From Podarcis muralis (taxonomy: Eukaryota), in assembly GCF_964188315.1 (NCBI RefSeq), contig NC_135660.1:41478001-41542000 (forward strand): DNA of 64,000 nucleotides, written 5' to 3'. The notes under the pieces are model-generated. The model was not told the DNA's origin and searched no databases. It was given only the letters and a program-made list of their open reading frames with translations. The position numbers and the translations under genes are program-made. Below, one piece after another: positions 445 to 54,115 of this stretch (the first letter of the stretch is position 1; each line of letters begins with the position of its first letter).

Positions 445-20045
<19,601 letters not shown>

Positions 20046-20175: not shown

Positions 20176-21779
20176 TCATGGTGTGCAGTCAGCCCCATGG
20201 ATCAAATTCATGAACCTTGGATGGCATAGGCAGAGGAGCTGCCTGGGTATGGCCAGAGACACTGCAGGAGAGGTGGCGGCGTGGATTCTGGTGGGCAGCA
20301 ACATGTGCTGTCTTGGATGAGATCCCTCAAGTTGACTCACCACTAGTCTAGGACCCCCTCCCCTGTGGTGATAAAGTTGAATAATGCCTGGGAAGAAAGC
20401 GTGGGAAGACAACCATCACCCCTTTTCCACACCAGGGAATTTCGCATGCTACTCTCTACCTCAGCGGATTTCCAGGATAGTCTCGGTCTGATTCTGCCCC
20501 ATTGTTCTTCTGCATCATGATTTCTGTGGGCAAGGCATTTCTGAAAGTATGCAGCAGAGTCTTACCCATTCCAGCACCTAGGTATCCCCCCCATTGTGTA
20601 ATCCTACACAGCCAGTCAAGCGTCATGGACTGTTCTAGTGTCCCATCAGATTGGTACTGCACTGGGGGATCCATAGATCTCAACTGGGAAGTACTGAATC
20701 ACAAAAAGTGGTCTGAGAGTGAGCAAACCAGGTTGGAGGGGGGCGGTGGGCCGGGAACTATGAAAATACTACTCGGGATGAAAGACAAAAACTGAACCTG
20801 TCCCTAGCTACCAGCAGTAGTACTGACCTCATTGTGTCCCCCCCCCCCTTGCCCAAAGTGCTCCTGAAACGAACTAAAAAAAGCCAAGAGAGATTCTGCT
20901 GTCTCATTCTTTATACAATCAATAAACTCAGAACCGACTGTGATTCATAGTCCTGACTAAAGGGTCCAATGTCCACGGAACAAGCAATTTAAATCCCTCG
21001 TGGTTAATTATTAGATAGTTAATCAAATCTCATCATATTATAAACAATGTCCCTATCTGGATGGCAGCAGTCTGTTAAAATTCAGGAGCACACAACACAA
21101 CCTTAGGAAATGGGAAGTGAAGACCACCTTTCCACAATGGACAACTTTATAACTCCCAATTCTGCCTTACGCTGAGACACAGGGAAGGGCCAATGTGTGG
21201 TTCTACCACAGGGTGAAATAATTCCTTTCCTACAAATTGGTGTTAATGGTAGGCTGTTGCAACGGTGTTCCCCTTTCTCAGGGTACTTTTATTTGTAAAG
21301 GTGGAGGGGGGCAGAGTTGAATTTCATAGATCAGTGCAGAAACACAGGTTCTCAGAATTCACATCTACTTTGCTCCTTCTCTAGTCCTGCTGTTGTAAAG
21401 TAAGCCTAAGCTCATGGTTTGTCTTGCTTCAGACATGGGCCCAGGCTTAGCCTGAAGCAGCAGGCCCAGAGGAGCAATCACAGTCTCTCCTCCTCTGTAT
21501 GCCAGAGCATTTGTGCCAAGTCATGATTTGGCTTAGCTTTACTTGTGAGTCATTGTGTGAGATCCACAATGGCCTTTAGCAGCAGAAACCACATGACTAA
21601 CTCTTACACAATCTCTGAATCTCTAAACTCCCCTTACCAGAGTCAGCTAAAACATCAAACATTTTCTGAACTTCTGCTCCTCCTCAAGATACTGATTATT
21701 CTGGAAGGTTAACTTACCTGAGGAGCTGCCCTGCTTGTCAAGAAGCTATGCAAATAGAGGCAAATGCCATAAGGGCAAG

Positions 21780-22200
21780 AAAATGATGCCCTTATGGCAA
21801 CCTTGCAGCCTGGCTACTCTAGTCCATGTGTTGATAAACGTGAGGTTGGATTACTGCAATGTGCTCTGTGTGGGGCTTCCCTTGGCCTCGTTCCGCCTGA
21901 ACCCTTATATTCCAGCTCAGTCACTAAGATCATTTGCAGGAGCGTCGTTGGTTATTCCCCAAATTGGTGGAGATCTGACAATAAGCATCCAAGCCTTTAG
22001 CGTCATCAGTCCAGCACTGTGGAATGTTCTGCCAATAAGGATTAACAGGTTCATGCAGGAAATCAAGAATACATCTTTCCGTAAAAGTTACCTCATTGCT
22101 GATTTTAACTTTTCAATATGGTTTTCGTTGTATGGTTTTATGTGTAATTGTTGCAAACCACTCTGGCATTTTTATGAAAAGTGATATATAATTTTTTTAA
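21780..22200 (+). mobile_element. Degenerate L2 LINE fragment
   Basis: ORF 21735-22184 contains RLDYCNVLCVGLP and AFSVISPALWNVLP, with an internal deletion relative to the 15845 copy. Confidence 0.7.
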
Positions 22201-34800: not shown

Positions 34801-37800
34801 GGTACTTTTTCTTTGTTTTGGCAGGGCCTATTGGGCTGGTATATGGTAAAAAGTGGATTAGAGGAAAAGCCAGACTCTCATGATATCCCACGGGTCAGTC
34901 AGTACCGTCTAGCCGCACACCTGGGCTCTGCACTTGTTCTTTACTGCTACAGCCTGTGGACTGGACTCTCATTACTGCTGCCGCAGCACAAGGTAAGCGA
35001 AAAGTGAGGCAGACCGGGGGCATGTATTGAGTCCCAGTTGGGCCAAGAAAGCCTGTACACCAATTGCGCCTTTGGAGGGAGGCACACTGCCACTGTGCAG
35101 ACCAAACTGCCACTGTATCCTACATGTGCTCAGCCTGGAAGAGGAAAATTACAAATCTTGGGAAATGTCAAAGAGATAACGTTCCTGGAAACACCACCAA
35201 AGCTTACCAGTCAAGAACTCTGTTAGCACTGACACTCCCATGCATAGAGGGAGCCAATGAACTTGCAGTGGGAGGCACACACTCCTGCATCACATGCAAA
35301 ACTAGCACCTGTTGGCAATTCTCATATTAGGTAGGGTTCCAAATCTCAGGTAGGGTTTCAAATCCCTTTATGGTGATCACAGCCACTTCTTCGGAGCATC
35401 ACACGAAAAGGGAAGAAAGGAGAGCCCACACAACACTGCACCCTCATAGTTCACTTGGTAGGATGGCCTCTTAAGAGGGTAGTTATTTAAGAAAGCATAG
35501 CAGGAGAAATGCAGACTGAGAAGAATTCAGCCTGGCATGAGCTATTCCATTTCTTACAGTGCAGTCTGCCACAACTTCCTCCAGTTCTAGCGAGGCGGCA
35601 TCCTTGCCACAGAAGATATTGCCATGCACTTTTGCCCTACACATCCAGGCAGTAGATGCTTCTGAGGCCTGTGGATCTGGTCTTGGTATGGTGACTTGAC
35701 AGTAGGATTAAATCAAGCATGCAGATGCTAACTGGCTGCTTCCAAGAACGCCTGGTGATTTCTATAAAATTTGGTAGATTTGGGTTCATAGATATAATTG
35801 GATGTAAGCCATGTCCATTAAGGGCCGTGCAGCATAACAGCTGAGTGAGAAGAGCAGAAGTCCTTGCTGCCTTAGCCATTGAGAGTGAAATAAATACGTT
35901 CCTCTTCTGTCAGGAGTCTTATTGGAAACGTGTATATATGCTGAGCCTATGGAACACTAGTTTCCTTTGCACATACTCCCTTTAGAATATATAAAAAGGC
36001 CATTGCATATTCTTGTGATCCTCCTCCTGTTTTGACAGTTACCAGAAACCCGTCAACTCCTGCGCCTAAGAAGGTTTGCTCATGGAACATCAGGCCTGAT
36101 CTTTCTCACTGCCCTCTCAGGTAAAAGTCCCTGTCACTTTTGCACCAATCTCTTTCTTTTGAGAAGCAATAGGCAGCATGGTCATGGATGTGTGTTTCTT
36201 GCTTCATTTCCCATTGGGAGGGTCTAGACTTTTTCAATTCCAGGTTACTGAAATGCTTCCTCTTCATGCTGGTCAGACAACATCACTGGGAACTGTTTTG
36301 TGGCCTTGAGGGAAGGACCTAAAACTCTCACCGTGTTGGCTTTTAGGTGGCTTGTTCTATTACATTCATACTTCCAAGTGTGACAGACTCTCTTCTCTGG
36401 AACTCTAGGGGCATTTGTGGCAGGACTGGATGCTGGTCTTGTATACAATTCATTTCCCAAGATGGGGGAACGCTGGATCCCTGATGATCTCCTTGCCTTT
36501 TCCCCAAAGTTGAAGAACATATTTGAGAATCCCACAACCGTGCAGTTTGATCACAGGATTCTGGTATGTTTCTTCCTCTTTATGCTCTTAGATAACACCT
36601 CTTTTTTAATTGGTTGCCGTTCTTGGGTTTGTGTTCATTCCAGGTGGCAGTGTAACTGGGAATGTGGGAATGCAGGCCCCTTAACTCAGAGTAGAGCACT
36701 TGTTTGCATGCCTAAAGTACTGGTTTCCATCTCCACTGTCTCTAATTAAAGGGTGCAAGTTACAAAGGGGGGGGGGTTAGTCTAAACATTAAGGAGAACA
36801 TCATGATGACATGAGTTTTTTGAAAGAGGAGCAGACTGCCCCAGAAGTGATGGACTCTTTTTCAGAGGCTGGATGGTCAGGGATGCTGTAGTAGTGAGGT
36901 TCCTGCATTGCCTTTGGACTAGAATCAGTGTTTCCCAACCTTGTGCCTCCAGCTGTTTTTGGCCTACAATTCCCATCATCCCTTGCCACTGGTCTTGCTA
37001 GTCAGGGATGATGGGAGTTGTGGGCCAAAAACATCTGGAGGCACAAGGTTGGGAAACACTGGACTAGATGACCTTTTAAGATCCCTTCCAACTCCACTTC
37101 TAAGCCCTTTGTTGTCATTGCAAAGCTTCTCTGGTTCCCTCACTGGATATTTACTCTTTTCCCTTTAGGGAGTTTCCTCTGTCGCAGCCATTACAGGTCT
37201 GTACCTGTTTTCCAGGAAGATTCCTCTCCCACGGAGGACAAGGATGGCAGTTGCTTCCTTACTGGCTGTGGCATACCTCCAGGTATTAACTATGCCCTTT
37301 AAAACACCCTTTTAATTGTCACTTAGTAGTGTCCGCTGATGGAATGGCAGGTTTCCCCTTCCTTCCAGGTAGGTGCCTGCCTTCTCGTCACTGATAAAGC
37401 TATCTTGGTTGCTGGTCTCAGGCATTTAAAACTGAAATTGGTGGGGACCAATTTTTATTTATTTATTTATTTGGCTTTGACGAACAAAGGGGGGAAATAG
37501 AGCTGCAGTCGTGCTCTTCTGTGGAAATATTGCACAGTGCTATGGTCACTGCCCTTCTCTGCCTTCTGGGTTTAAACTGAGAAGGCAAAGGGGGAACATC
37601 AGTGCAGTTTCATTAGCATTTTATCATGAAGCACAATGACAGCTACCTCATCCTGTAGCAGGTTATTTACGGTGGGAGAGAGACAGAACATATAAAAATC
37701 CCCATACCAATTGCTTATGAAGCTTCTTGTGTATAATTCTGTGCTATAAGAATACGATGCAGATGTATTTGCACATACTTCTACATTTCAGGTATACTGG

Positions 37801-37985
37801 TAAGCAAACTTTGCTTACGTCTGAAACTTCATTTTATTCTTGCTCCTCTGCAGGTTACCCTGGGCATCAGCACACTTCTCCTGTATGTCCCAACTCCTTT
37901 AGCAGCCACTCATCAATCAGGTTCCTTGGTATTGCTCAGTGTGGCGTTGTGGCTGATGCATGAACTGAAGCGGATCCCAAAATAA
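31620..37985 (+). CDS. COX15: Heme A synthase COX15
   Basis: Exons: 31620-31691 (Arg/Leu-rich presequence [18 protein letters not shown]), 32899-33086, 34011-34133 ([11 protein letters not shown]), 34350-34536 ([12 protein letters not shown]), 34825-34992 ([12 protein letters not shown]), 36039-36120, 36409-36563 ([10 protein letters not shown]...QFDHR), 37169-37282, 37854-37985 (LAATHQSGS...RIPK*). 1221 nt, 406 aa, all GT-AG. AATAAA at 38517-38522 and 38795-38800. Confidence 0.96.
33571..33931 (+). mobile_element. Sauria-type SINE (subfamily B), full length, in COX15 intron 2
   Basis: GGGATGCGGGTGGCGCTGTGGG head, (TTTACC)n tail, possible TAGATA target-site duplication. Confidence 0.9.
36926..37061. 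mobile_element. Palindromic hAT-type MITE nested in a CR1 3' fragment
   Basis: 27-bp perfect TIR CAGTGTTTCCCAACCTTGTGCCTCCAG; flanks GACTAGAAT and GACTAGAT. The surrounding sequence (~36828-37100) reads as a CR1 tail (GGACTAGATGACC...CCCTTCCAACTC). Decayed relatives near 811-930, 14800-14930, 27574-27693, 40985-41110, 51320-51560, 61410-61460. Confidence 0.8.
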
Positions 37986-38819
37986 CCCTGCTTCCCTATT
38001 TAGCCAGCCTCTGCTAGTGCTGAAGGTTCACGGTTGCTGCTACCTTTGCCCCACGTGTTGTATGCTCCTCTTCCTGAAAGCCTTAATTTGAACAGAAGGC
38101 GAGGCCGAGCAGCACCTTGATGTCAGGAGTTGAAGTGCTTTGTTGCAAAACTTTGTGAACATGAATACCATCCTTTGCTTAAGGTGTGATGTTGATAAGG
38201 CGGGCTCTGGCAAGAATGATGGTCGCTTGAGGTGTGTCTTGCTTCCTGCTGAGCTATCTGTATGAGGCTACAGCCATGAGCCTTTTACATTCTTTGTAGG
38301 CTTGATATAGACAATGGATTATGGGGTTAGTGGGCCTAGAAATTTGGATGAATAGCAAATGAAGGCATTTCAAAACTGTATTATAAGGGTGATGGGTGGC
38401 CTAGTTTGTGGATTTTCTTTAGCAGAATGGGGTTTGAGTGCAATTTTTTGCATTAGAATATTGAAATGTGCACTGTAATTTAACCATGCAGAAGACCCAC
38501 AGTCCTTTCCTTATTTAATAAAAAAAGTTTCTCAATATTTCTCAATATCTCAGTATTTTAAAACTGACTGTTCTTACAATGTCCCTATGCAATGTACCTT
38601 CATAAGAAACTGCTGCAGCAAACCAAAGGCTCCATTAAGTCCATCATCTTGTTCTCAGTGGCCAACCAGATGCCTGTGGTAGCTTTCAAACAGGCACATG
38701 AGTGGGTTGATTTGGAACACGTTTCATTAACATCAATATCCACAAAGGATTTTTTCTGGGAGGGGTGGGGGGGAGTAAATGCTGCAAATGAGTAAATAAA
38801 CATAACTAGCAGCAGAGAA

Positions 38820-39250
38820 CCTCGCAATACACCCTCCGAGGCAGCAGGGGGCGGTACGACACAGGCAACTCCATTCGGAACCGAGGCTCCAAAATACGGG
38901 GTGGCGAAGGGGGGAAAACACCGGGAGGGCGCACGGAATTCTGATTGGTTGCGGACCGGGCCAGAAGCGAAGGAAGCGACCGGCGGAGGGGCGGAGACTC
39001 ACTCTTCTTGCGGTCTCGGCGGCGGCGGCTTCTTGTCCTTCATCCCGTCGGTCGCTCCCAACCTGCCTCGCTATGACGGCGCACAGCTTCGCGCTGCCGA
39101 TCATCCTCTTCTCGGTCTTCTGGGGGCTCGTGGGAATCGCCGGGCCGTGGCTCGTGCCCAAGGGGCCCAACCGCGGGTGAGGCTCCCCGCCCGCGCAGCC
39201 TCCGCCCGCCCGATCCACCGCCAGGTCTCACGGTCATCGCCATCGCCAAA
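38820..39250 (+). promoter_or_regulatory. CpG-island promoter of the ATP6V0E2-like gene
   Basis: CpG-rich segment with reverse CCAAT (ATTGG 38944-38948) and GC box GGGGCGG 38988-38994 upstream of the ATG at 39073. Confidence 0.65.
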
Positions 39251-39343
39251 TAGATCAATATATGCATTGTGATCTATAATTGCGAGGGAAGGGTGGTGGT
39301 GGTCCCTGCTAAAGGCTTTGAGAATATCTGTATCTAGATAGAT

Positions 39344-39388
<45 letters not shown>

Positions 39389-40796
39389 GTGAGAATGACC
39401 TATATATCAAAATAGATCACTATATAGAGATACTGATATATTGGGAGATGACATGACACACACAAAGCCTTAGCAGGGACCAGCACCCGCTTCCCCCGCA
39501 AGTGCGACACTCGCAGGCTTTCCTTCTCCGCAGCCGCCTTTGGCCTTGAAGGCGGCCTGATCCACGGATGCTGTGAATGGGACTCCGCATCGCTTCAGAC
39601 TGCCAAGTGTGTGTGTGGGGGGGGTCACATTTATGAATGCTCCCTCGCGTTGGAAACACCAACGACCCTGCAAATAGCAAACTAGTATAGCAGCCAAAGG
39701 GCTGGGCTAGGGTATTTTTCTCTTATGAACACGGTATATAGGAGTCGGGGTGTGGGAGCAGGGAGGAAGAGGGTTGAGGAGTGCCTGATCTGGGAATCCT
39801 TTCTCCTGTGTGACCCCCTTGATTGCTTCTGTAACAGCACAATCCTATCCATGTCTACTCAGAAGTAATTCCTAATATATTCAGTGGGGTTTACTCCCAG
39901 GTAAGTAGGGTTAGGATTGCAGCTTTACTCAATCTTTTTTCTTTTTCATTGTTTTCACTTCACAGAGTGATTATTACCATGTTGGTGACCACAGCCATTT
40001 CCTGCTATCTCTTGTGAGTATTGCGTAGGGGAGATGGGTTGTGGGTGTAGGGCTGGGTTGTACCCAGCAGGAAACCAACCACCCTCATAACTTTATCTAA
40101 CTGGCTGCTTCCTGAATATTGGGGATCTAAGAAGGAATCCCAAATAGAAGAGGCTCTCCTGTATACACCACCTTGGAGATGCTCAAGCCAGGTCCTTATT
40201 CTACACATAGGTGCATAAACAGCGTGCCTCTCTCTCATAAAATAAGCTTTTGGGTAATCTTGGATCATGGTACACTGTCTCTTCCAATATGTCCTAGCAT
40301 CATTCATGCATGATACTCCCAGGACCCCATATATGAACAAGGAGTGGATTTTGCATCCCACAACAAGCCTTAGACCATCTCTGATCATGCACCAAAGCAC
40401 TAGACTGTTCTAGCTGCTATGACATCCTGTCTGGCTCAGCTGTTATGCTAAGCTTGACACTCTCAGGCATAATGCACCAGGGCAGATCTTATCTCCTTGT
40501 AGTACATTTAAAGAACTAGAAGACCTTGCTCCCTAGATTGTATATCCCTCCTACAGTGATACTGTCCTCTTTATAAGAATAACTGTTACTTGCAAAAATG
40601 ACCTAGCAGTTACTTGCAAAATATAACTTTTTGTATTTCAGCACTAGTGCAAAAGGAGTTGTGATCCAGTTTATATGTCTCCTTCCTATCTTTCCCTTGC
40701 AGCTGGCTTATAGCACTCCTGGCCCAGGCCAACCCGCTGTTTGGACCCCAGCTGAAGAATGAGACCATCTGGTATGTGCGCTTCCTGTGGGAGTGA
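39073..40796 (+). CDS. ATP6V0E2: V-type proton ATPase subunit e2 (V0 sector), 81 aa
   Basis: Exons 39073-39176 (104 nt), 39966-40013 (48 nt), 40703-40796 (94 nt), all GT-AG. They encode [81 protein letters not shown]. The KGPNRG and [14 protein letters not shown] motifs are those of subunit e, and the termini MTAHSFALP and YVRFLWE match e2 rather than e1 as I recall them. Non-coding last exon from ~41316 with AATAAA at 41817-41822. Confidence 0.93.
39335..39388. repeat. (GATA)n microsatellite
   Basis: About 13 GATA units with one GAT interruption. Confidence 0.95.
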
Positions 40797-43082
40797 ACTG
40801 GACCACTATCAACCAATTCAACAGGTACTTGCTCTATCCAGCGCTACCTAACCTACCTTACTAACACACACATACATTAGATGCAACTCATTAATAGCTT
40901 GTAAGAAAAAGGAATCTATTTGCTTCCAGTTTACAAAGATTCCCTTCCTTGGTTCATTGCCTGACTCACCTGTCAATGGCATAGCCCAGGGATGGGGAAC
41001 TTATGGTTCTCTAGATGTTATTGGATTCTGACTCCTATTAGCCCAAGCCAATATAGCCAGTCAGGGATCATAGTCCAGCCACATGAGAATCATAGGTCCC
41101 ATCCCTGGCTTAACCAATAAAACCAGAAAGGTACCTGTAATCTGTCTCCCAGAGTGTTGTCACTGTGGTTCTATAAGACAAGTCACTTTCTCGTTGTCTG
41201 TAAAAGGTAGCTATGGTAAATCTCACTGAAAGGGCAACAGGTTGATTGTTCCCAGATATCTTCTATCCTGCTGGGGTAAAGTGAATACTAAGAAATCTTT
41301 TTCTCTTTTTCCTAGGCTTCCTTCTGATGCTAGATAACAGCTCCACCCCTTGTCCTTTCCAGTACTAACTCAACGGATCTTTTGTTTGCACTCTAAATTT
41401 CCCCACAGCGGTAGGGCCAAGACCCAAACATATGAAGGGACCATTTCACTTGTTTAACCATCTCCCACCTGTTTTAATTGATGCATCTTGGTGGCATCTG
41501 CTCTTGGGTTTGATGTTGTAACTAAATGTTCCTCTCTTGGCAGTTAGGGGAAATGTTTAGATTTTGAAAGTCCTGTAATGAACGCTAAGACTGAATAATT
41601 GCTGATGGAGCTCTGGAACACCCTCTTGGGCAAGATACAAGACACCTTCCTTACTTTTACATGGTGATGCTCGCCCAGTAGATCTGTTCTCTCCCTATCT
41701 TTCTCCATTAGCAGTGAGGCTGCTGCACTAGGATGCATTTGCCTAGAATTCCCCCTTCCACTATTATTTATAATGTTGTGTATTTGTATTTATTCAGTGT
41801 AAACTGGTATCGTGAAAATAAATTTTTTTAGTATGTGAGCTTTTTTTGTCTTCTGTTAAAGAGATCTGATATGGGGCCCAGAAGTGCTTGAAATTCAGCC
41901 AAGGTAATACTCCAGCCTCCATCCATAGCATCTAATTGGTACTGGGCTGAAATCAAAAGTGGTGTGTGTTTCCTGACAAGGAGCACTTCAGTAAACTATC
42001 CAGGTGGTGTAAGCAACTAAGCCACTGCAAATTTCCAGACTAGGATTTATGAAAGTAACCCTATTGTGTTCAGGACGATACAGCAATAAAGCAAGCTCTT
42101 TTCCTTTGGTCTACAATTGTAGATTGGTTCTCATTCTTGAGCACAGGTGAGAAATTATGGTTTTTACAGCTAGTAAAACCAACCAGCTACAGCAACCAAC
42201 AAGCTTCCAGCACAACTAGCATCAAGAAACGCTGCTTACACAGTTCAGCATAATTTATTGCTACAGTAACTGGAGTTCAAGTATGAAAACAAATTCATAA
42301 TTTAACTTAGCCCATAGTTGATTGAGTTTATGGGCTAGGTGTTGTTAAAACAAGTACCAGGGACAGCGTTCCACACTTCAAGGTGGTCTTCTGTGAAACT
42401 TGGAACTGCTGGAAGCCCCAGTGCCAGGACAACAGCACTGAGACACACTGAATGATGGGTAAATGTGGGATTTGAAAGGAGTTTGTGCAAAATGTATTTG
42501 TGGGGAGGAGTGTGAAGGAAGGCAGCAGATTATCTGCCTTGGTTTTTTTAAAAGGATATTTCTTACCCTCAAGGAATCCTGTTTGCACAACTCCTTTTTT
42601 GGTCCTATCACAGACATCAACAGAAGTAGGGGGGGGGGAAAGATGTGATCGTAGTAAAGCATCAGAAAGAACCACTTTCTTTCCTTTTGCGGGAGAGCTG
42701 TCCAGTTCTTGGCCACACAAGGTCCTTCTCCCTCCCTTCCTGAGTAAATCAAGTTTCTTTGGTCACTTTCAGCTATGTTGCCTTTTGCCCACTGTCAAGG
42801 GTAGCAGAGATCAGCTTCCCTTGCCTCACAGCACCTGCAGCTTGATTCTCCCACAGTGGCTGGGGATTTCAGCCACGGAGGAAAATCTAGAGTCCATTAG
42901 GGTTGAGCGGCTTAGGTTTGGGGGCAGACAAATCTGAGCAGACACTGTTTAGGCCCTGGGGTTGGGCTGGAGTCCTGCAGAATTCTGGACTAGCCCGCAA
43001 GAGAATCACAGCTTCTGGCCCATTAAAAGCCACTGCCAATAGGGCAGACATGGAGAGAGTTCACCAAGAGGTAGTTCTTTTG

Positions 43083-46000
43083 TCAGGAGGCTGCCTCCTG
43101 TGCTGGCAGCGGCACCACTTCTGCTAGCCACAGCAGGTCCAGCTGTGCCACGTGCAACTGCTTCTGGTGGATGCGGCGCAGACGGAAGAGGTAGAGTCCA
43201 ATTGCAAGCATCACCACAAGAATGCACACAAAGAAAAGATAGTGGTTATAAACAAAGGAGAGACGGAGCCAAGGGCTGCGAGGTTGGTGGATGCTCTCCT
43301 GGCGGAGATCCCTGAAAAACAAAGAAAAATCAGTCTGAAGTTGAAATGTGAAGCTGTGCTAAGCTTGAATCTCTTGCAACTAGCAGACAAAGAAGCATTC
43401 CAGATACTGCAGTAAGTATGATTCCCAAATACCTGGCTTTTCTCAGGCCTATGCCCTACAGACCATTTGTAAATAGATGAGAGGTGTCAAAAACATAGGT
43501 TTTAGTTTTTTAACATTTAAGACATCATGTTGCCTACTGATAAAGGATCAACTTCCTTTTCATGCAGGCTCTGTGCTTCATTGAGAGTGCATTTGATGTC
43601 TCTCCCTTAGGTACCTCTTAAAAACATACCAGGTCTCTGCATGCATCTGCTTTCTCCTTTTCTGTTTTTTTCAGAAAAGCAGTGCTGGCAGATCACTTGC
43701 TTTCTCAAGTTTAAAAAATGAAACTTCGGACTTTAAACACAGGGTACTGAACTCTTCCATGTTTCAAGATCAATCCTATGCATGCTTATTGAGAATAAGC
43801 CCTCCTCAGGTTGAACTCTGTGAAGCTTACTCCCAAGTTCACATATTAAGATGACCGAGCACTCTAATTAGGGCTAGAAAACCGGCATTTTACTCCTAGT
43901 CAAGCGCCATGGTCCAGTTCTTTACTGAAGACCTTGTTTGAAAGACTGATTCTGAAGTAACCAGAAGAACTCTACCACTCTTAAGATGAGAAAAGATGCA
44001 GTGGACAGCAATTTAGATTACCTGAGTGGCAGGAAGCGAGTTTTATAGAGAATGGCTCCCAGTGTCCATTGTACCTCACGATCATACACCAACTGGGCTG
44101 TGCGCAGACCAGAATAATCCTTGGGGAAATGAAAGCCTTCGTGCAGGACTTGGTGCATCCATGCTGATTTGAAGCACTGGTACCTGCAAGCAGAGCATAG
44201 AGACTCGATCACAAATATGCTGGGCTGAGGCTCATCAGTTGAGAAGACTGCTGGGGGGCAATCTTATCCCCACCCCTTCACCGTCCATGGAAGAAGAGTT
44301 AAGGACCAAGCACATTCTCTGTGAAAGGGAAGAATGGATTCTTACTTGACACGGTGCAGGTCTGCATGTGCTGAGTATAGATGGTCTCGGAACCTCTGGG
44401 TCAGTACGGACCAGCTCAGGCTGCAATAATCCTGGAAGGAGGCAAAAGACATGAGTGGGCACAGAAACAACACCCCCTATCCTGGCAAAGTGGTCACGTA
44501 TTCTAGAGTCACCTGGGCAGCGCGTGTGAACGTGGGCATGTGGTACAGTCCTCCCATGCGCAGCACATCTTCGGTGCAATAGTAGAATTCAGAGAACCCA
44601 TAGAATTCGCTGTTAACAAAGTCAATCGGTGCCTGATAGGTGTTGCGCAGAGAGACCGTGGTTCTGTTGTCTCCCGCCAGCAGGAGGCGCACTTGCTTCG
44701 CACACGACTGCCAGTCCCCCTGGCCCTTGATGTGCAGGGTCTGGCCGCCATGCTCCACAACATCCTCCAGTCCCACAGGCAGGCAGGGGTCCAAGACGGG
44801 CACCCCAGCATTTGCGCCGAGCTGCTCACCCTGCAACCTGCAATGAGAGCCTAAGCTTCAGGGTTGGGAAAACACAGACATCCCCAGCGGCAAGTTATGA
44901 TCGGTGAGTTCTTCTGTGCCACCCCGAAACAGGCTAGAGGACCATCAAAAACTTATCCCACTGATCTCATCACTCAGGGAGCCTGCCTCCTACAAATAAA
45001 CACACACAAAGAATGCCCTCTCCCAGGCTGCCACTCCTTGAACTTCTGGGGGCAGTGGAATCCAGAGTTGCCTTTAGAAACCTTTTGAAACCTGGCAGCA
45101 TGAGGACATCACCTGTTGTGGGTGGTGGTCTGATTCAGCACCAGCTCTTCATAGCGCTGTCGGGCGTAGTTGCCCCCAAAGCCCAGGAAGGTGCTGACGT
45201 AGACTCGGTACACGTGCTTCGTGTGTTGCATGTCACAGCCAAGGTTGAAATCAGCAAGCAGGCTCTTGGCAGCTTCCTCCTGTCGGTAGCAGAGGGGAGG
45301 GTGGCAGGGGGAGGGAGAGCGGGAGTAAGAAACAGGGCCCAACCTGGACCATAGCACATATTTCCTTCCCAAGCTACACACCTCCTGCGGGGAAGAGAAG
45401 GACGTGGAAGTCGGCACCTCATAGGCGATTTGCAGAGAGGCACCTCCCATGTCAAGGATCCCAACAGTCCTCTTTCGCACCAGGGTTTCTTCCTGGCCAG
45501 CCAGGGTCACAGAAATCACTGCATCTTCCTCTACAATCCCAGAGGGAGGGAGAGAAAGAGAAAGAGAGAGTTTCCAAAGCAATGGAAAAGGGAGATGGAA
45601 GATGGCACATCCCCATACCTCTTGGGCTGAACACTAGAAATGTCTAGGGTTTGATGGGGCAGAAGTTAGGGAAGAAGTGGGGATCAGCTCTAGTCTCTCT
45701 TGCTCACCTTCACTCCTGCTAAACTGCAGAATGGGAAGGGGCCTTAGTTCAGGTCATGTGGGAAAGCCAAATCTCCATTCCTGCTGGGAATCGAGCAAAC
45801 TGCTGGAGATTCCCTCCTTCAACAGGGAACTGAGCCAAAAGAGAAAACTTCTACCTACCCATTCAACTCCACTGTCCCTTTCCCGCAGTCTCACCTTCTT
45901 CGTGGTCAAATCTTCCCAATACAAAGTTGATGCCTATCCAAGAATAGACTCCTGGGAAATTGGGGGTGGGGGAAGAAAGAGAATCAAGAGCAGTGTTGGG

Positions 46001-53956: not shown

Positions 53957-53960
<4 letters not shown>

Positions 53961-54010
<50 letters not shown>
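53961..54010. repeat. (GA)25 microsatellite in ENTPD7 intron 1
   Basis: Perfect dinucleotide run. Confidence 0.95.
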
Positions 54011-54011
<1 letters not shown>

Positions 54012-54115
54012 GCGCCTCTGGCCGCAGAGGAGGCTCCTCCGCCCGGCAGTGCCACGGTTCCCCTTCCACACAGGCAGCGCTCCTTTCCCCCCGCTTCCCC
54101 GGGGAGCCGACTTAC

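What the first reader, a model, noticed from the sequence alone, without database searches (positions are those of the whole stretch)
38820..41840. A complete ATP6V0E2-type V-ATPase subunit gene sits between COX15 and ENTPD7, where human has no such gene
Seen: a 3-coding-exon, 81-aa gene with its own CpG promoter, 104/48-nt first exons, a non-coding last exon and a polyA signal, so it is not a retrocopy. Established: human 10q24 runs SLC25A28-ENTPD7-COX15-CUTC-ABCC2 with COX15 and ENTPD7 adjacent, and human ATP6V0E2 is on 7q36 (ATP6V0E1 on 5q35). Inference: this is either the ancestral e2 position (the mammalian gene moved), a squamate DNA-level transposition, or a third e-subunit paralogue. 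As I recall the human proteins, it also differs at otherwise shared positions (AQANP vs AQLNP, ISCYLF vs VCCYLF).
Basis: partly seen in the sequence, partly recalled or inferred. Interest (0 to 1): 0.75.

Follow-up and report, generated by a model that had tools for sequence, protein, structure and literature searches.

The report
Ordinary lizard ATP6V0E2 at ancestral position
This is the normal, already annotated lizard gene for the small e2 subunit of the vacuolar proton pump, sitting where frogs, turtles, birds and lizards all keep it; mammals are the lineage that moved it.

Summary
Window 38820-41840 holds an intact 81-aa V-ATPase subunit e2 gene on the + strand. It has three coding exons (104, 48 and 94 nt of CDS), a CpG-island promoter, a probable non-coding last exon and an AATAAA. 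It lies between the COX15 stop (37983-37985, +) and the ENTPD7 stop (43083-43085, -).

It is not new. The three exons spell exactly a RefSeq protein named "V-type proton ATPase subunit e 2" of Podarcis muralis, Lacerta agilis and other lacertids. The order CUTC-COX15-e2-ENTPD7(-SLC25A28) is annotated in a skink, three lacertids, a guineafowl and a sea turtle. In two frogs e2 lies next to ENTPD7 or next to CUTC. In echidna and seal it lies next to KRAB genes instead.

A tree splits e1 from e2 with 100/99 support and places this gene among squamate e2, following the species tree. Splice positions and phases are identical from shark to seal, so the mammalian move was at DNA level. dN/dS is 0.06-0.20. 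A 2025 paper already uses atp6v0e1/2 as markers of the NKX2-3/NKX2-5 paralogous regions.

AQANP is the general sauropsid state.

The parts
38820..39260 (+). CpG island / promoter and 5' end of ATP6V0E2 (transcription start not mapped)
   Evidence: GC 0.66, CpG o/e 1.04, 50 CpGs; upstream 38400-38820 has o/e 0.07
39073..39176 (+). Exon 1 coding part, 104 nt (34 codons plus 2 nt), donor GG|GTGAGG
   Evidence: PDB phmmer gives e2 62.6 bits against e1 39.7. Pfam PF05493 E 4.4e-5.
39177..39965 (+). Intron 1. It contains a (GATA)11 run at 39344-39387 flanked by 27-nt inverted arms, and a SINE-like stretch near 39850-39923.
39966..40013 (+). Exon 2, 48 nt
   Evidence: The same boundaries and phases are found in shark, frog, bird, echidna and seal.
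40703..40824 (+). Exon 3: CDS 40703-40796 with TGA at 40794-40796, then 28 nt of 3' UTR up to the donor CAG|GTACTT
   Evidence: The donor is conserved in Tiliqua.
41316..41840 (+). Probable non-coding last exon with AATAAA at 41817-41822. A second possible acceptor lies at 41543|41544.
   Evidence: The acceptor AG, the exon start GCTTCC.TCTGATGCTA and GTGAAAATAAA are conserved between the lacertid and the skink, while the intron is poorly alignable. No RNA evidence.
37737..37985 (+). Last coding exon of COX15 with its stop TAA at 37983-37985. Candidate polyA signals at 38517 and 38795, the latter just before the e2 CpG island.
43083..43358 (-). Last coding exon of ENTPD7 with its stop at 43083-43085, convergent with e2. 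Candidate polyA signal (reverse complement) at 42254-42259.

Best explanation
The feature is the single-copy lizard orthologue of ATP6V0E2. This is the roughly 9-kDa hydrophobic e2 subunit of the membrane (V0) sector of the vacuolar H+-ATPase. It is transcribed from its own CpG-island promoter directly downstream of COX15 and converges on ENTPD7.

This position, inside the CUTC/COX15/ENTPD7/SLC25A28 block of the NKX2-3 paralogous region, is the ancestral tetrapod location of e2. Its sister gene ATP6V0E1 lies in the NKX2-5 region. In the mammalian stem lineage, before monotremes split off, the intron-containing gene was moved by a DNA-level rearrangement to a region rich in KRAB genes. In eutherians that place is directly downstream of ZNF862.

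Shown here: the gene model, e2 identity, identity to annotated RefSeq e2, synteny in 10 non-mammalian assemblies with their 10-kb flanks, a different context in two mammals, conserved splice sites and purifying selection.

Inferred: the direction and timing of the move, expression, and incorporation into the pump.
For: - e2 identity: PDB phmmer of exons 1 and 3 hits brain V-ATPase chain e2 (6vq6, 6xbw) better than e1 (62.6 v 39.7 and 58.7 v 49.5 bits). Both exons match Pfam PF05493.
- Exact match to annotation: database protein P0137 is named 'V-type proton ATPase subunit e 2' in Podarcis muralis and Lacerta agilis, and its accessions include an older Zootoca vivipara record. It equals the three exon translations plus the two split codons. 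Locus L013 is 100% identical to the window's exon ORFs.
- Sauropsid synteny, from Pfam-labelled gene calls: Tiliqua, Numida, Lepidochelys and three lacertids all show [CutC(-)] COX15(+) e2(+) GDA1_CD39(-) [Mito_carr(+)]. tblastn of window exons confirms this.
- Frogs: in Pelobates, e2(+) is followed by a GDA1_CD39 gene on -. In Engystomops, CutC(-) abuts e2(+).
- Mammals: echidna has a KRAB zinc-finger neighbour. Seal has a 1170-aa KRAB+hAT neighbour. Neither has COX15 or ENTPD7 exons within 10 kb.
- Tree: e1 and e2 split at 100/99, and the window-identical protein sits inside squamate e2.
- Gene structure and selection: identical splice positions and phases from shark to seal, and dN/dS 0.06-0.20.
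- Literature: atp6v0e1/2 is listed among the paralogous families flanking NK4 genes, together with slc25a28/37 and entpd4/7 (PMC12019251). Chicken GGA13 carries ATP6V0E1-CREBRF-BNIP1-NKX2-5 (PMC12108394). Human 10q24.2 carries NKX2-3, SLC25A28, ENTPD7, COX15, CUTC (PMC3297573). Human 7q36.1 carries SSPO, ZNF862, ATP6V0E2, ACTR3C (PMC8606216).
Against:
- Only 10 kb of flank per locus could be seen. The second frog upstream neighbour (RhoGAP in Pelobates) and the Rhinophrynus locus (no neighbours) show that the frog arrangement is not identical to the sauropsid one. COX15 was not seen next to e2 in any frog.
- The frog GDA1_CD39 gene was taken as ENTPD7 from its identity level and orientation. 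It was not tested against ENTPD4.
- In shark, sturgeon and a teleost the immediate neighbours differ, so the exact COX15-e2-ENTPD7 order is shown only for sauropsids.
- Echidna and seal contexts share no sequence besides e2 within the flanks, so a single mammalian move is the parsimonious reading, not a demonstrated one.
Confidence: 0.93

Rival explanations
1. The sauropsid and frog position is derived, and the mammalian (7q36-like) position is ancestral.
For: Shark, sturgeon and teleost e2 do not have COX15 or ENTPD7 as immediate neighbours within 10 kb.
Against: This would need the same insertion next to ENTPD7/CUTC in amphibians and sauropsids, or one insertion in stem tetrapods followed by a move in mammals, which is the same as the main reading.

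Shark and sturgeon e2 lie head-to-head with a 571-579-aa amino-oxidase-fold gene. Its exons read like PYROXD2. PYROXD2 is a human 10q24.2 gene by my recollection; this was not tested against a named database. No KRAB gene is seen there.

e1 lies beside NKX2-5 and the ENTPD7 block lies beside NKX2-3, as expected for ohnologues. PMC12019251 lists atp6v0e1/2 among those paralogous families.
Confidence: 0.03
2. A squamate-specific DNA-level transposition placed e2 between COX15 and ENTPD7.
For: None beyond the contrast with human that prompted the idea.
Against: The same order occurs in a guineafowl and a sea turtle. Two frogs have e2 beside ENTPD7 or CUTC.
Confidence: 0.01
3. A third subunit-e paralogue, distinct from e1 and e2.
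For: Two residues differ from the mammalian proteins (A in AQANP, S in ISCYLF).
Against: The tree has only two clades (100/99), and this protein sits inside squamate e2 in a topology that follows the species tree. Squamate genomes show one e2 and one e1, on different chromosomes in Tiliqua and Rhineura (contig lengths). The exact protein occurs once in each of three lacertid assemblies. The two residues are lineage states.
Confidence: 0.01
4. The gene is intact but silent or decaying in lizards.
For: No RNA data could be examined.
Against: dN/dS is 0.12 against the skink, 0.09 against the guineafowl and 0.09 against the frog, and there are no non-synonymous changes among the lacertids. All splice sites, the start and the stop are intact and conserved. 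The CpG island is unmethylated-type, with o/e 1.04.
Confidence: 0.03

Closest known systems
Mammalian ATP6V0E2 (V-type proton ATPase subunit e 2; chain e of the rat and bovine brain V-ATPase structures 6vq6 and 6xbw)
   Same: Both are 81 aa, with the same three coding exons and intron phases. Full-length identity is about 85-88% for the close skink orthologue P0002; for this gene the checked exon parts give 79-82% (exon 1) and 90-93% (exon 3) against echidna and seal. The termini MTAHSFALP and YVRFLWE are identical.
   Different: Genomic place: COX15/ENTPD7 here, KRAB genes in echidna and seal. A few residues differ: A for L in AQ.NP, S for C in I.CYLF, and LFS for IFT in the first helix.
ATP6V0E1 (subunit e 1)
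   Same: Same Pfam family PF05493, same length, and an identical central block PKGPNRGVI...[24 protein letters not shown].
   Different: A separate clade at 100/99 support. About 65-69% identity for the skink orthologue P0002. Different N- and C-termini. Located on another chromosome beside NKX2-5.
RefSeq ATP6V0E2 models of other squamates, birds and turtles
   Same: Identical protein in Podarcis and Lacerta. Same neighbours and orientation.
   Different: Nothing of note. Some records carry predicted N-terminal extensions or alternative 3' exons, such as Rhineura X1 and the Lepidochelys model.

Membership tests
V-ATPase V0 subunit e (Pfam PF05493 ATP_synt_H) | Match to the family profile | tested here: met
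   Exon 1 matches profile positions 1-26 (E 4.4e-5, 24.3 bits). Exon 3 matches positions 44-62 (E 2.9e-4, 21.7 bits). Each piece alone is just under the 25-bit cut-off. The whole, sequence-identical gene product in lacertid assemblies carries PF05493 in the precomputed table.
V-ATPase V0 subunit e (Pfam PF05493 ATP_synt_H) | About 80 aa, with end-to-end alignment to the subunit seen in solved V-ATPase structures | tested here: met
   Exon 1 aligns to residues 1-34 and exon 3 to residues 52-81 of chain e in 6vq6 and 6xbw, without gaps. The total is 81 aa.
V-ATPase V0 subunit e (Pfam PF05493 ATP_synt_H) | Physical incorporation into the V0 sector | not testable with these tools
   Needs proteomics or a structure of a reptile V-ATPase.
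ATP6V0E2 orthologue group (e2, not e1) | Falls in the e2 clade of a subunit-e tree | tested here: met
   The e1|e2 branch has 100/99 support. The window-identical protein P0137 sits within squamate e2, next to birds, then mammals, frogs and fishes.
ATP6V0E2 orthologue group (e2, not e1) | Conserved gene structure (two introns, phases 2 and 2, at the same codons) | tested here: met
   gg|GT, AG|n, tt|GT and AG|c at the same codons in the window, skink, guineafowl, frog, echidna, seal and shark.
ATP6V0E2 orthologue group (e2, not e1) | Single copy in the genome | tested here: inconclusive
   The exact protein occurs once in each of three lacertid assemblies. The rest of this genome could not be searched.
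Expressed gene | Spliced transcripts | not tested

The most novel reading that the evidence does not exclude
The undescribed part may be the mammalian side. ATP6V0E2 left the NKX2-3/ENTPD7 paralogous region once, in the mammalian stem before the monotreme split. It moved as an intron-containing DNA segment and landed in a KRAB-gene region, directly downstream of the hAT-transposase-derived ZNF862 in eutherians. This gave it a new regulatory neighbourhood. I found no paper that states this explicitly. The link to a hAT element is pure speculation.
Probability: 0.45. Interest if true: 0.3.

Novelty: already known. Interest (0 to 1): 0.12.

Why it matters
It matters little for the lizard, where this is a correctly placed, already annotated housekeeping-type gene. 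There are two modest points of value. First, it is a clean worked example that a gene 'missing' between two human neighbours can mark a mammalian relocation rather than a reptile novelty. Second, it dates that relocation to the mammalian stem and shows it was at DNA level. That could interest people studying e1/e2 isoform regulation or the 2R paralogous regions around the NKX2 genes.

Tried and rejected

Exons were searched one by one by reference. Whole-protein steps used the database protein P0137, which is identical.

3. For the word search, exon 1 was given inside a stop-free 80-codon reference that includes 45 codons of 5' UTR, and only residues 41-80 were scored. Without this, the tool's length window would have excluded 81-aa proteins.

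4. The search of earlier findings near the place returned nothing. By words it returned only unrelated notes.

5. Long ORFs tried on Pfam to find the neighbours were mostly blank. COX15 and ENTPD7 exons were then read from stop-free ORFs and confirmed by tblastn against annotated loci.

6. A search for ZNF862-like or any other shared sequence between the echidna and seal flanks found only e2 exon 1.

7. The teleost (Cynoglossus) and Rhinophrynus loci gave no informative neighbours.

8. The supplementary synteny table of PMC12019251 is not held.

9. Mammalian COX15-ENTPD7 intervals could not be fetched. No human or other primate contig was fetched, saved or compared. A human/chimpanzee entry merely appeared in a cluster list and was not used.

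10. The big representative search, structure prediction and fold search were not used because the family scans left nothing open.
Full report
**What is there**

- The ATG is at 39073.
- Exon 1 coding sequence is 39073-39176 (104 nt), ending GG|GTGAGG.
- Exon 2 is 39966-40013 (48 nt).
- Exon 3 begins at 40703, with TGA at 40794-40796.
- The in-frame parts translate to 34, 15 and 30 residues. The two split codons, GG|A and TT|C, add Gly and Phe, giving 81 aa.
- A donor (CAACAG|GTACTT) follows 28 nt after the stop. That is too close to the stop to trigger nonsense-mediated decay by the usual 50-nt rule.
- An acceptor (TTTTTCCTAG|GCTTCC) opens a last, non-coding exon at 41316.
- AATAAA lies at 41817-41822.

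The 5' end sits in a sharp CpG island. Over 38820-39260 the GC content is 0.66, CpG o/e is 1.04 and there are 50 CpGs. The 420 bp upstream have an o/e of 0.07.

**Neighbours in the window**

- COX15 exons run on the + strand from about 31.6 kb to a TAA at 37983-37985. AATAAA signals lie at 38517 and 38795, the second only about 25 bp before the e2 CpG island.
- ENTPD7 exons run on the - strand from 52.3 kb down to a stop at 43083-43085, so ENTPD7 converges on e2.
- A CutC-family exon lies on the - strand near 28 kb, and a mitochondrial-carrier exon on the + strand near 55.2 kb.
- ABCC-type exons lie on the - strand at 2-14 kb (read by eye).

The window therefore runs ABCC2-CUTC-COX15-e2-ENTPD7-SLC25A28. 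Apart from e2, this is the human 10q24.2 order as listed in PMC3297573.

**What the gene is**

The exons were searched one by one by reference.

- Exon 1 and exon 3 each match Pfam PF05493, at profile positions 1-26 and 44-62.
- Against PDB sequences both exons prefer subunit e2 of the rat and bovine brain V-ATPase (6vq6, 6xbw) over e1. The scores are 62.6 v 39.7 bits for exon 1 and 58.7 v 49.5 bits for exon 3. The alignments are gap-free over residues 1-34 and 52-81.
- A word search was run with exon 1 embedded in a stop-free 80-codon reference, scoring only residues 41-80. It returned 53 proteins, all named e2 where named.
- Cluster members of the best squamate hit include P0137, named 'V-type proton ATPase subunit e 2' in Podarcis muralis and Lacerta agilis. 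Its accessions include an older Zootoca vivipara record, and the current Zootoca record, P0144, differs by one residue.
- The sequence of P0137 is residue for residue what the three exons and two split codons spell.
- One of the three assemblies carrying P0137 (L013) is 100% identical to every exon-bearing ORF of the window that was tested, non-coding extensions included. The window therefore comes from that lacertid assembly.

**Is the position unusual?**

It is not. The gene calls with Pfam labels around e2 give the following.

| Lineage | Species (call) | Arrangement around e2 |
|---|---|---|
| Squamate | Tiliqua scincoides (18) | CutC(-) COX15(+) e2(+) GDA1_CD39(-) |
| Squamate | Three lacertid assemblies (32) | COX15(+) e2(+) GDA1_CD39(-), with CutC(-) upstream in two of the three |
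| Bird | Numida meleagris (19) | Same as the skink, plus Mito_carr(+) |
| Turtle | Two Lepidochelys kempii assemblies (20) | COX15(+) e2(+) GDA1_CD39(-) |
| Frog | Pelobates cultripes (24, 36) | e2(+) followed 5.5 kb later by a GDA1_CD39 gene on - |
| Frog | Engystomops pustulosus (41) | A CutC gene on - abuts e2(+) |
| Monotreme | Echidna (21) | A KRAB zinc-finger gene upstream |
| Eutherian | Harbour seal (33) | A 1170-aa KRAB plus hAT-dimerisation gene ends 3 kb upstream |

tblastn of the window's COX15 and ENTPD7 exon ORFs confirms the sauropsid loci. The exons of the Pelobates GDA1_CD39 gene are 55-77% identical to the lizard ENTPD7 exons, about the same as the guineafowl's. The seal neighbour fits ZNF862 of the human 7q36.1 list SSPO, ZNF862, ATP6V0E2, ACTR3C (PMC8606216). 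No COX15 or ENTPD7 exon is detectable within 10 kb in either mammal.

With amphibians as outgroup to amniotes, the ENTPD7/CUTC neighbourhood is the ancestral tetrapod place and mammals are the derived lineage.

**Deeper outgroups**

- In a shark and three sturgeon assemblies, e2 lies head-to-head with a 571-579-aa gene of the amino-oxidase fold.
- The exon ORFs of that gene read like PYROXD2, a human 10q24.2 gene. Both points are my recollection and were not tested against a named database.
- A teleost and a third frog gave no informative neighbours.
- The ohnologue logic agrees with an ancestral 10q24-type location. ATP6V0E1 lies with CREBRF, BNIP1 and NKX2-5 on chicken chromosome 13 (PMC12108394).
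- The ENTPD7 block lies with NKX2-3 on human 10q24.2.
- A 2025 paper lists atp6v0e1/2 together with slc25a28/37 and entpd4/7 among the paralogous families that flank the NK4 genes (PMC12019251).

So the linkage of e2 to this block is already in the literature, at least at the level of a figure.

**Paralogue or orthologue?**

I built a maximum-likelihood tree of 44 subunit-e proteins, 23 named e2 and 21 named e1. N-terminal over-predictions were trimmed to the last 81 residues.

- The tree splits e1 from e2 with 100/99 support.
- The window-identical protein P0137 sits in a squamate e2 group next to birds, then mammals, frogs and fishes, following the species tree.
- Eighty-one columns cannot resolve the inner forks, but the e1/e2 split is unambiguous.
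- Squamates show one e2 and one e1. In Tiliqua and Rhineura these lie on different chromosomes (contig lengths).

A third paralogue is therefore rejected.

- The A of AQANP is shared by every sauropsid sampled, a sturgeon and a stickleback. Mammals and frogs have L, sharks M, and other teleosts T or V.
- The Ser of ISCYLF replaces a nearly universal Cys. It is shared with Zootoca and Rhineura, so it is a lineage substitution of lacertids and their amphisbaenian relatives.

**Function and constraint**

- Counting substitutions exon by exon (counts summed, sequences not joined) gives dN/dS of 0.12 against the skink, 0.09 against the guineafowl, 0.09 against the frog, 0.10-0.20 against mammals and 0.06 against the shark.
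- Against Lacerta there are only two synonymous differences and no non-synonymous ones.
- Splice sites sit at the same codons and phases in lizard, skink, bird, frog, echidna, seal and shark.
- The mammalian copy therefore kept its introns and was moved as DNA. It is not a retrocopy.
- The donor after the stop, the acceptor and start of the last exon, and the AATAAA context are conserved between the lacertid and the skink. The intron between them aligns poorly.
- An alternative donor inside exon 3 (ATCTG|GTATGT) and a second acceptor at 41543|41544 correspond to the alternative C-termini in the Rhineura X1 and Lepidochelys models.

The mechanism is inferred from the family. The protein would be the small two-helix e subunit of the V0 proton-translocating sector, as seen in the brain enzyme structures.

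**Not done**

- A search of the rest of this genome for other copies.
- Mammalian COX15-ENTPD7 intervals.
- Naming of the fish and frog neighbours.
- No human or other primate contig was fetched or compared.

**Verdict**

The only mildly new angle is on the mammalian side: a DNA-level relocation in the mammalian stem.

Noticed in passing
window 39286-39496: Intron 1 of e2 holds a (GATA)11 microsatellite (39344-39387). It is bracketed by 27-nt inverted arms that are 81% complementary (39286-39312 and 39470-39496). It looks like a small hairpin or MITE-like insert.
   Followed up: partly
window 39850-39923: A SINE-like stretch in intron 1. It also matches an unrelated place in the skink locus (L001 1515-1588, 80% over 74 bp), so it is a dispersed squamate repeat.
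   Followed up: no
window 15983-17198 (-) and 21696-22181 (+): Reverse-transcriptase and C-terminal ORFs of a non-LTR retrotransposon (267 and 126 aa without stops) lie between ABCC2 and CUTC. A related fragment lies inside the CUTC region. Read by eye only; Pfam gave nothing significant for the 267-aa ORF.
   Followed up: partly
window 38517-38990: The COX15 polyA signal at 38795 lies only about 25 bp before the e2 CpG island. The two same-strand genes are nearly abutting, so read-through or promoter occlusion is conceivable. Lacerta agilis has about 1.1 kb of extra sequence at this junction (L012 8604-9744).
   Followed up: no
window 41789-42259: The 3' ends of e2 (+) and ENTPD7 (-) converge within about 400 bp. 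A second reverse-strand AATAAA at 41789-41794 would make the two transcripts overlap.
   Followed up: no
L018 7549-12516 and L006: In two frogs no COX15 exon lies beside e2. CutC abuts e2 in Engystomops, and a RhoGAP gene lies 9 kb upstream in Pelobates. COX15 may therefore have a different place in anurans.
   Followed up: partly
L015 1-7091: In the seal, e2 lies 3 kb downstream of, and on the same strand as, a 1170-aa KRAB plus hAT-dimerisation gene (ZNF862-like). So a gene derived from a DNA transposase sits at the mammalian landing site.
   Followed up: partly
window 53959-54111: A long (CT/GA)n run, read as SLSLSL on the - strand, lies inside the ENTPD7/SLC25A28 bidirectional CpG island.
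   Followed up: no
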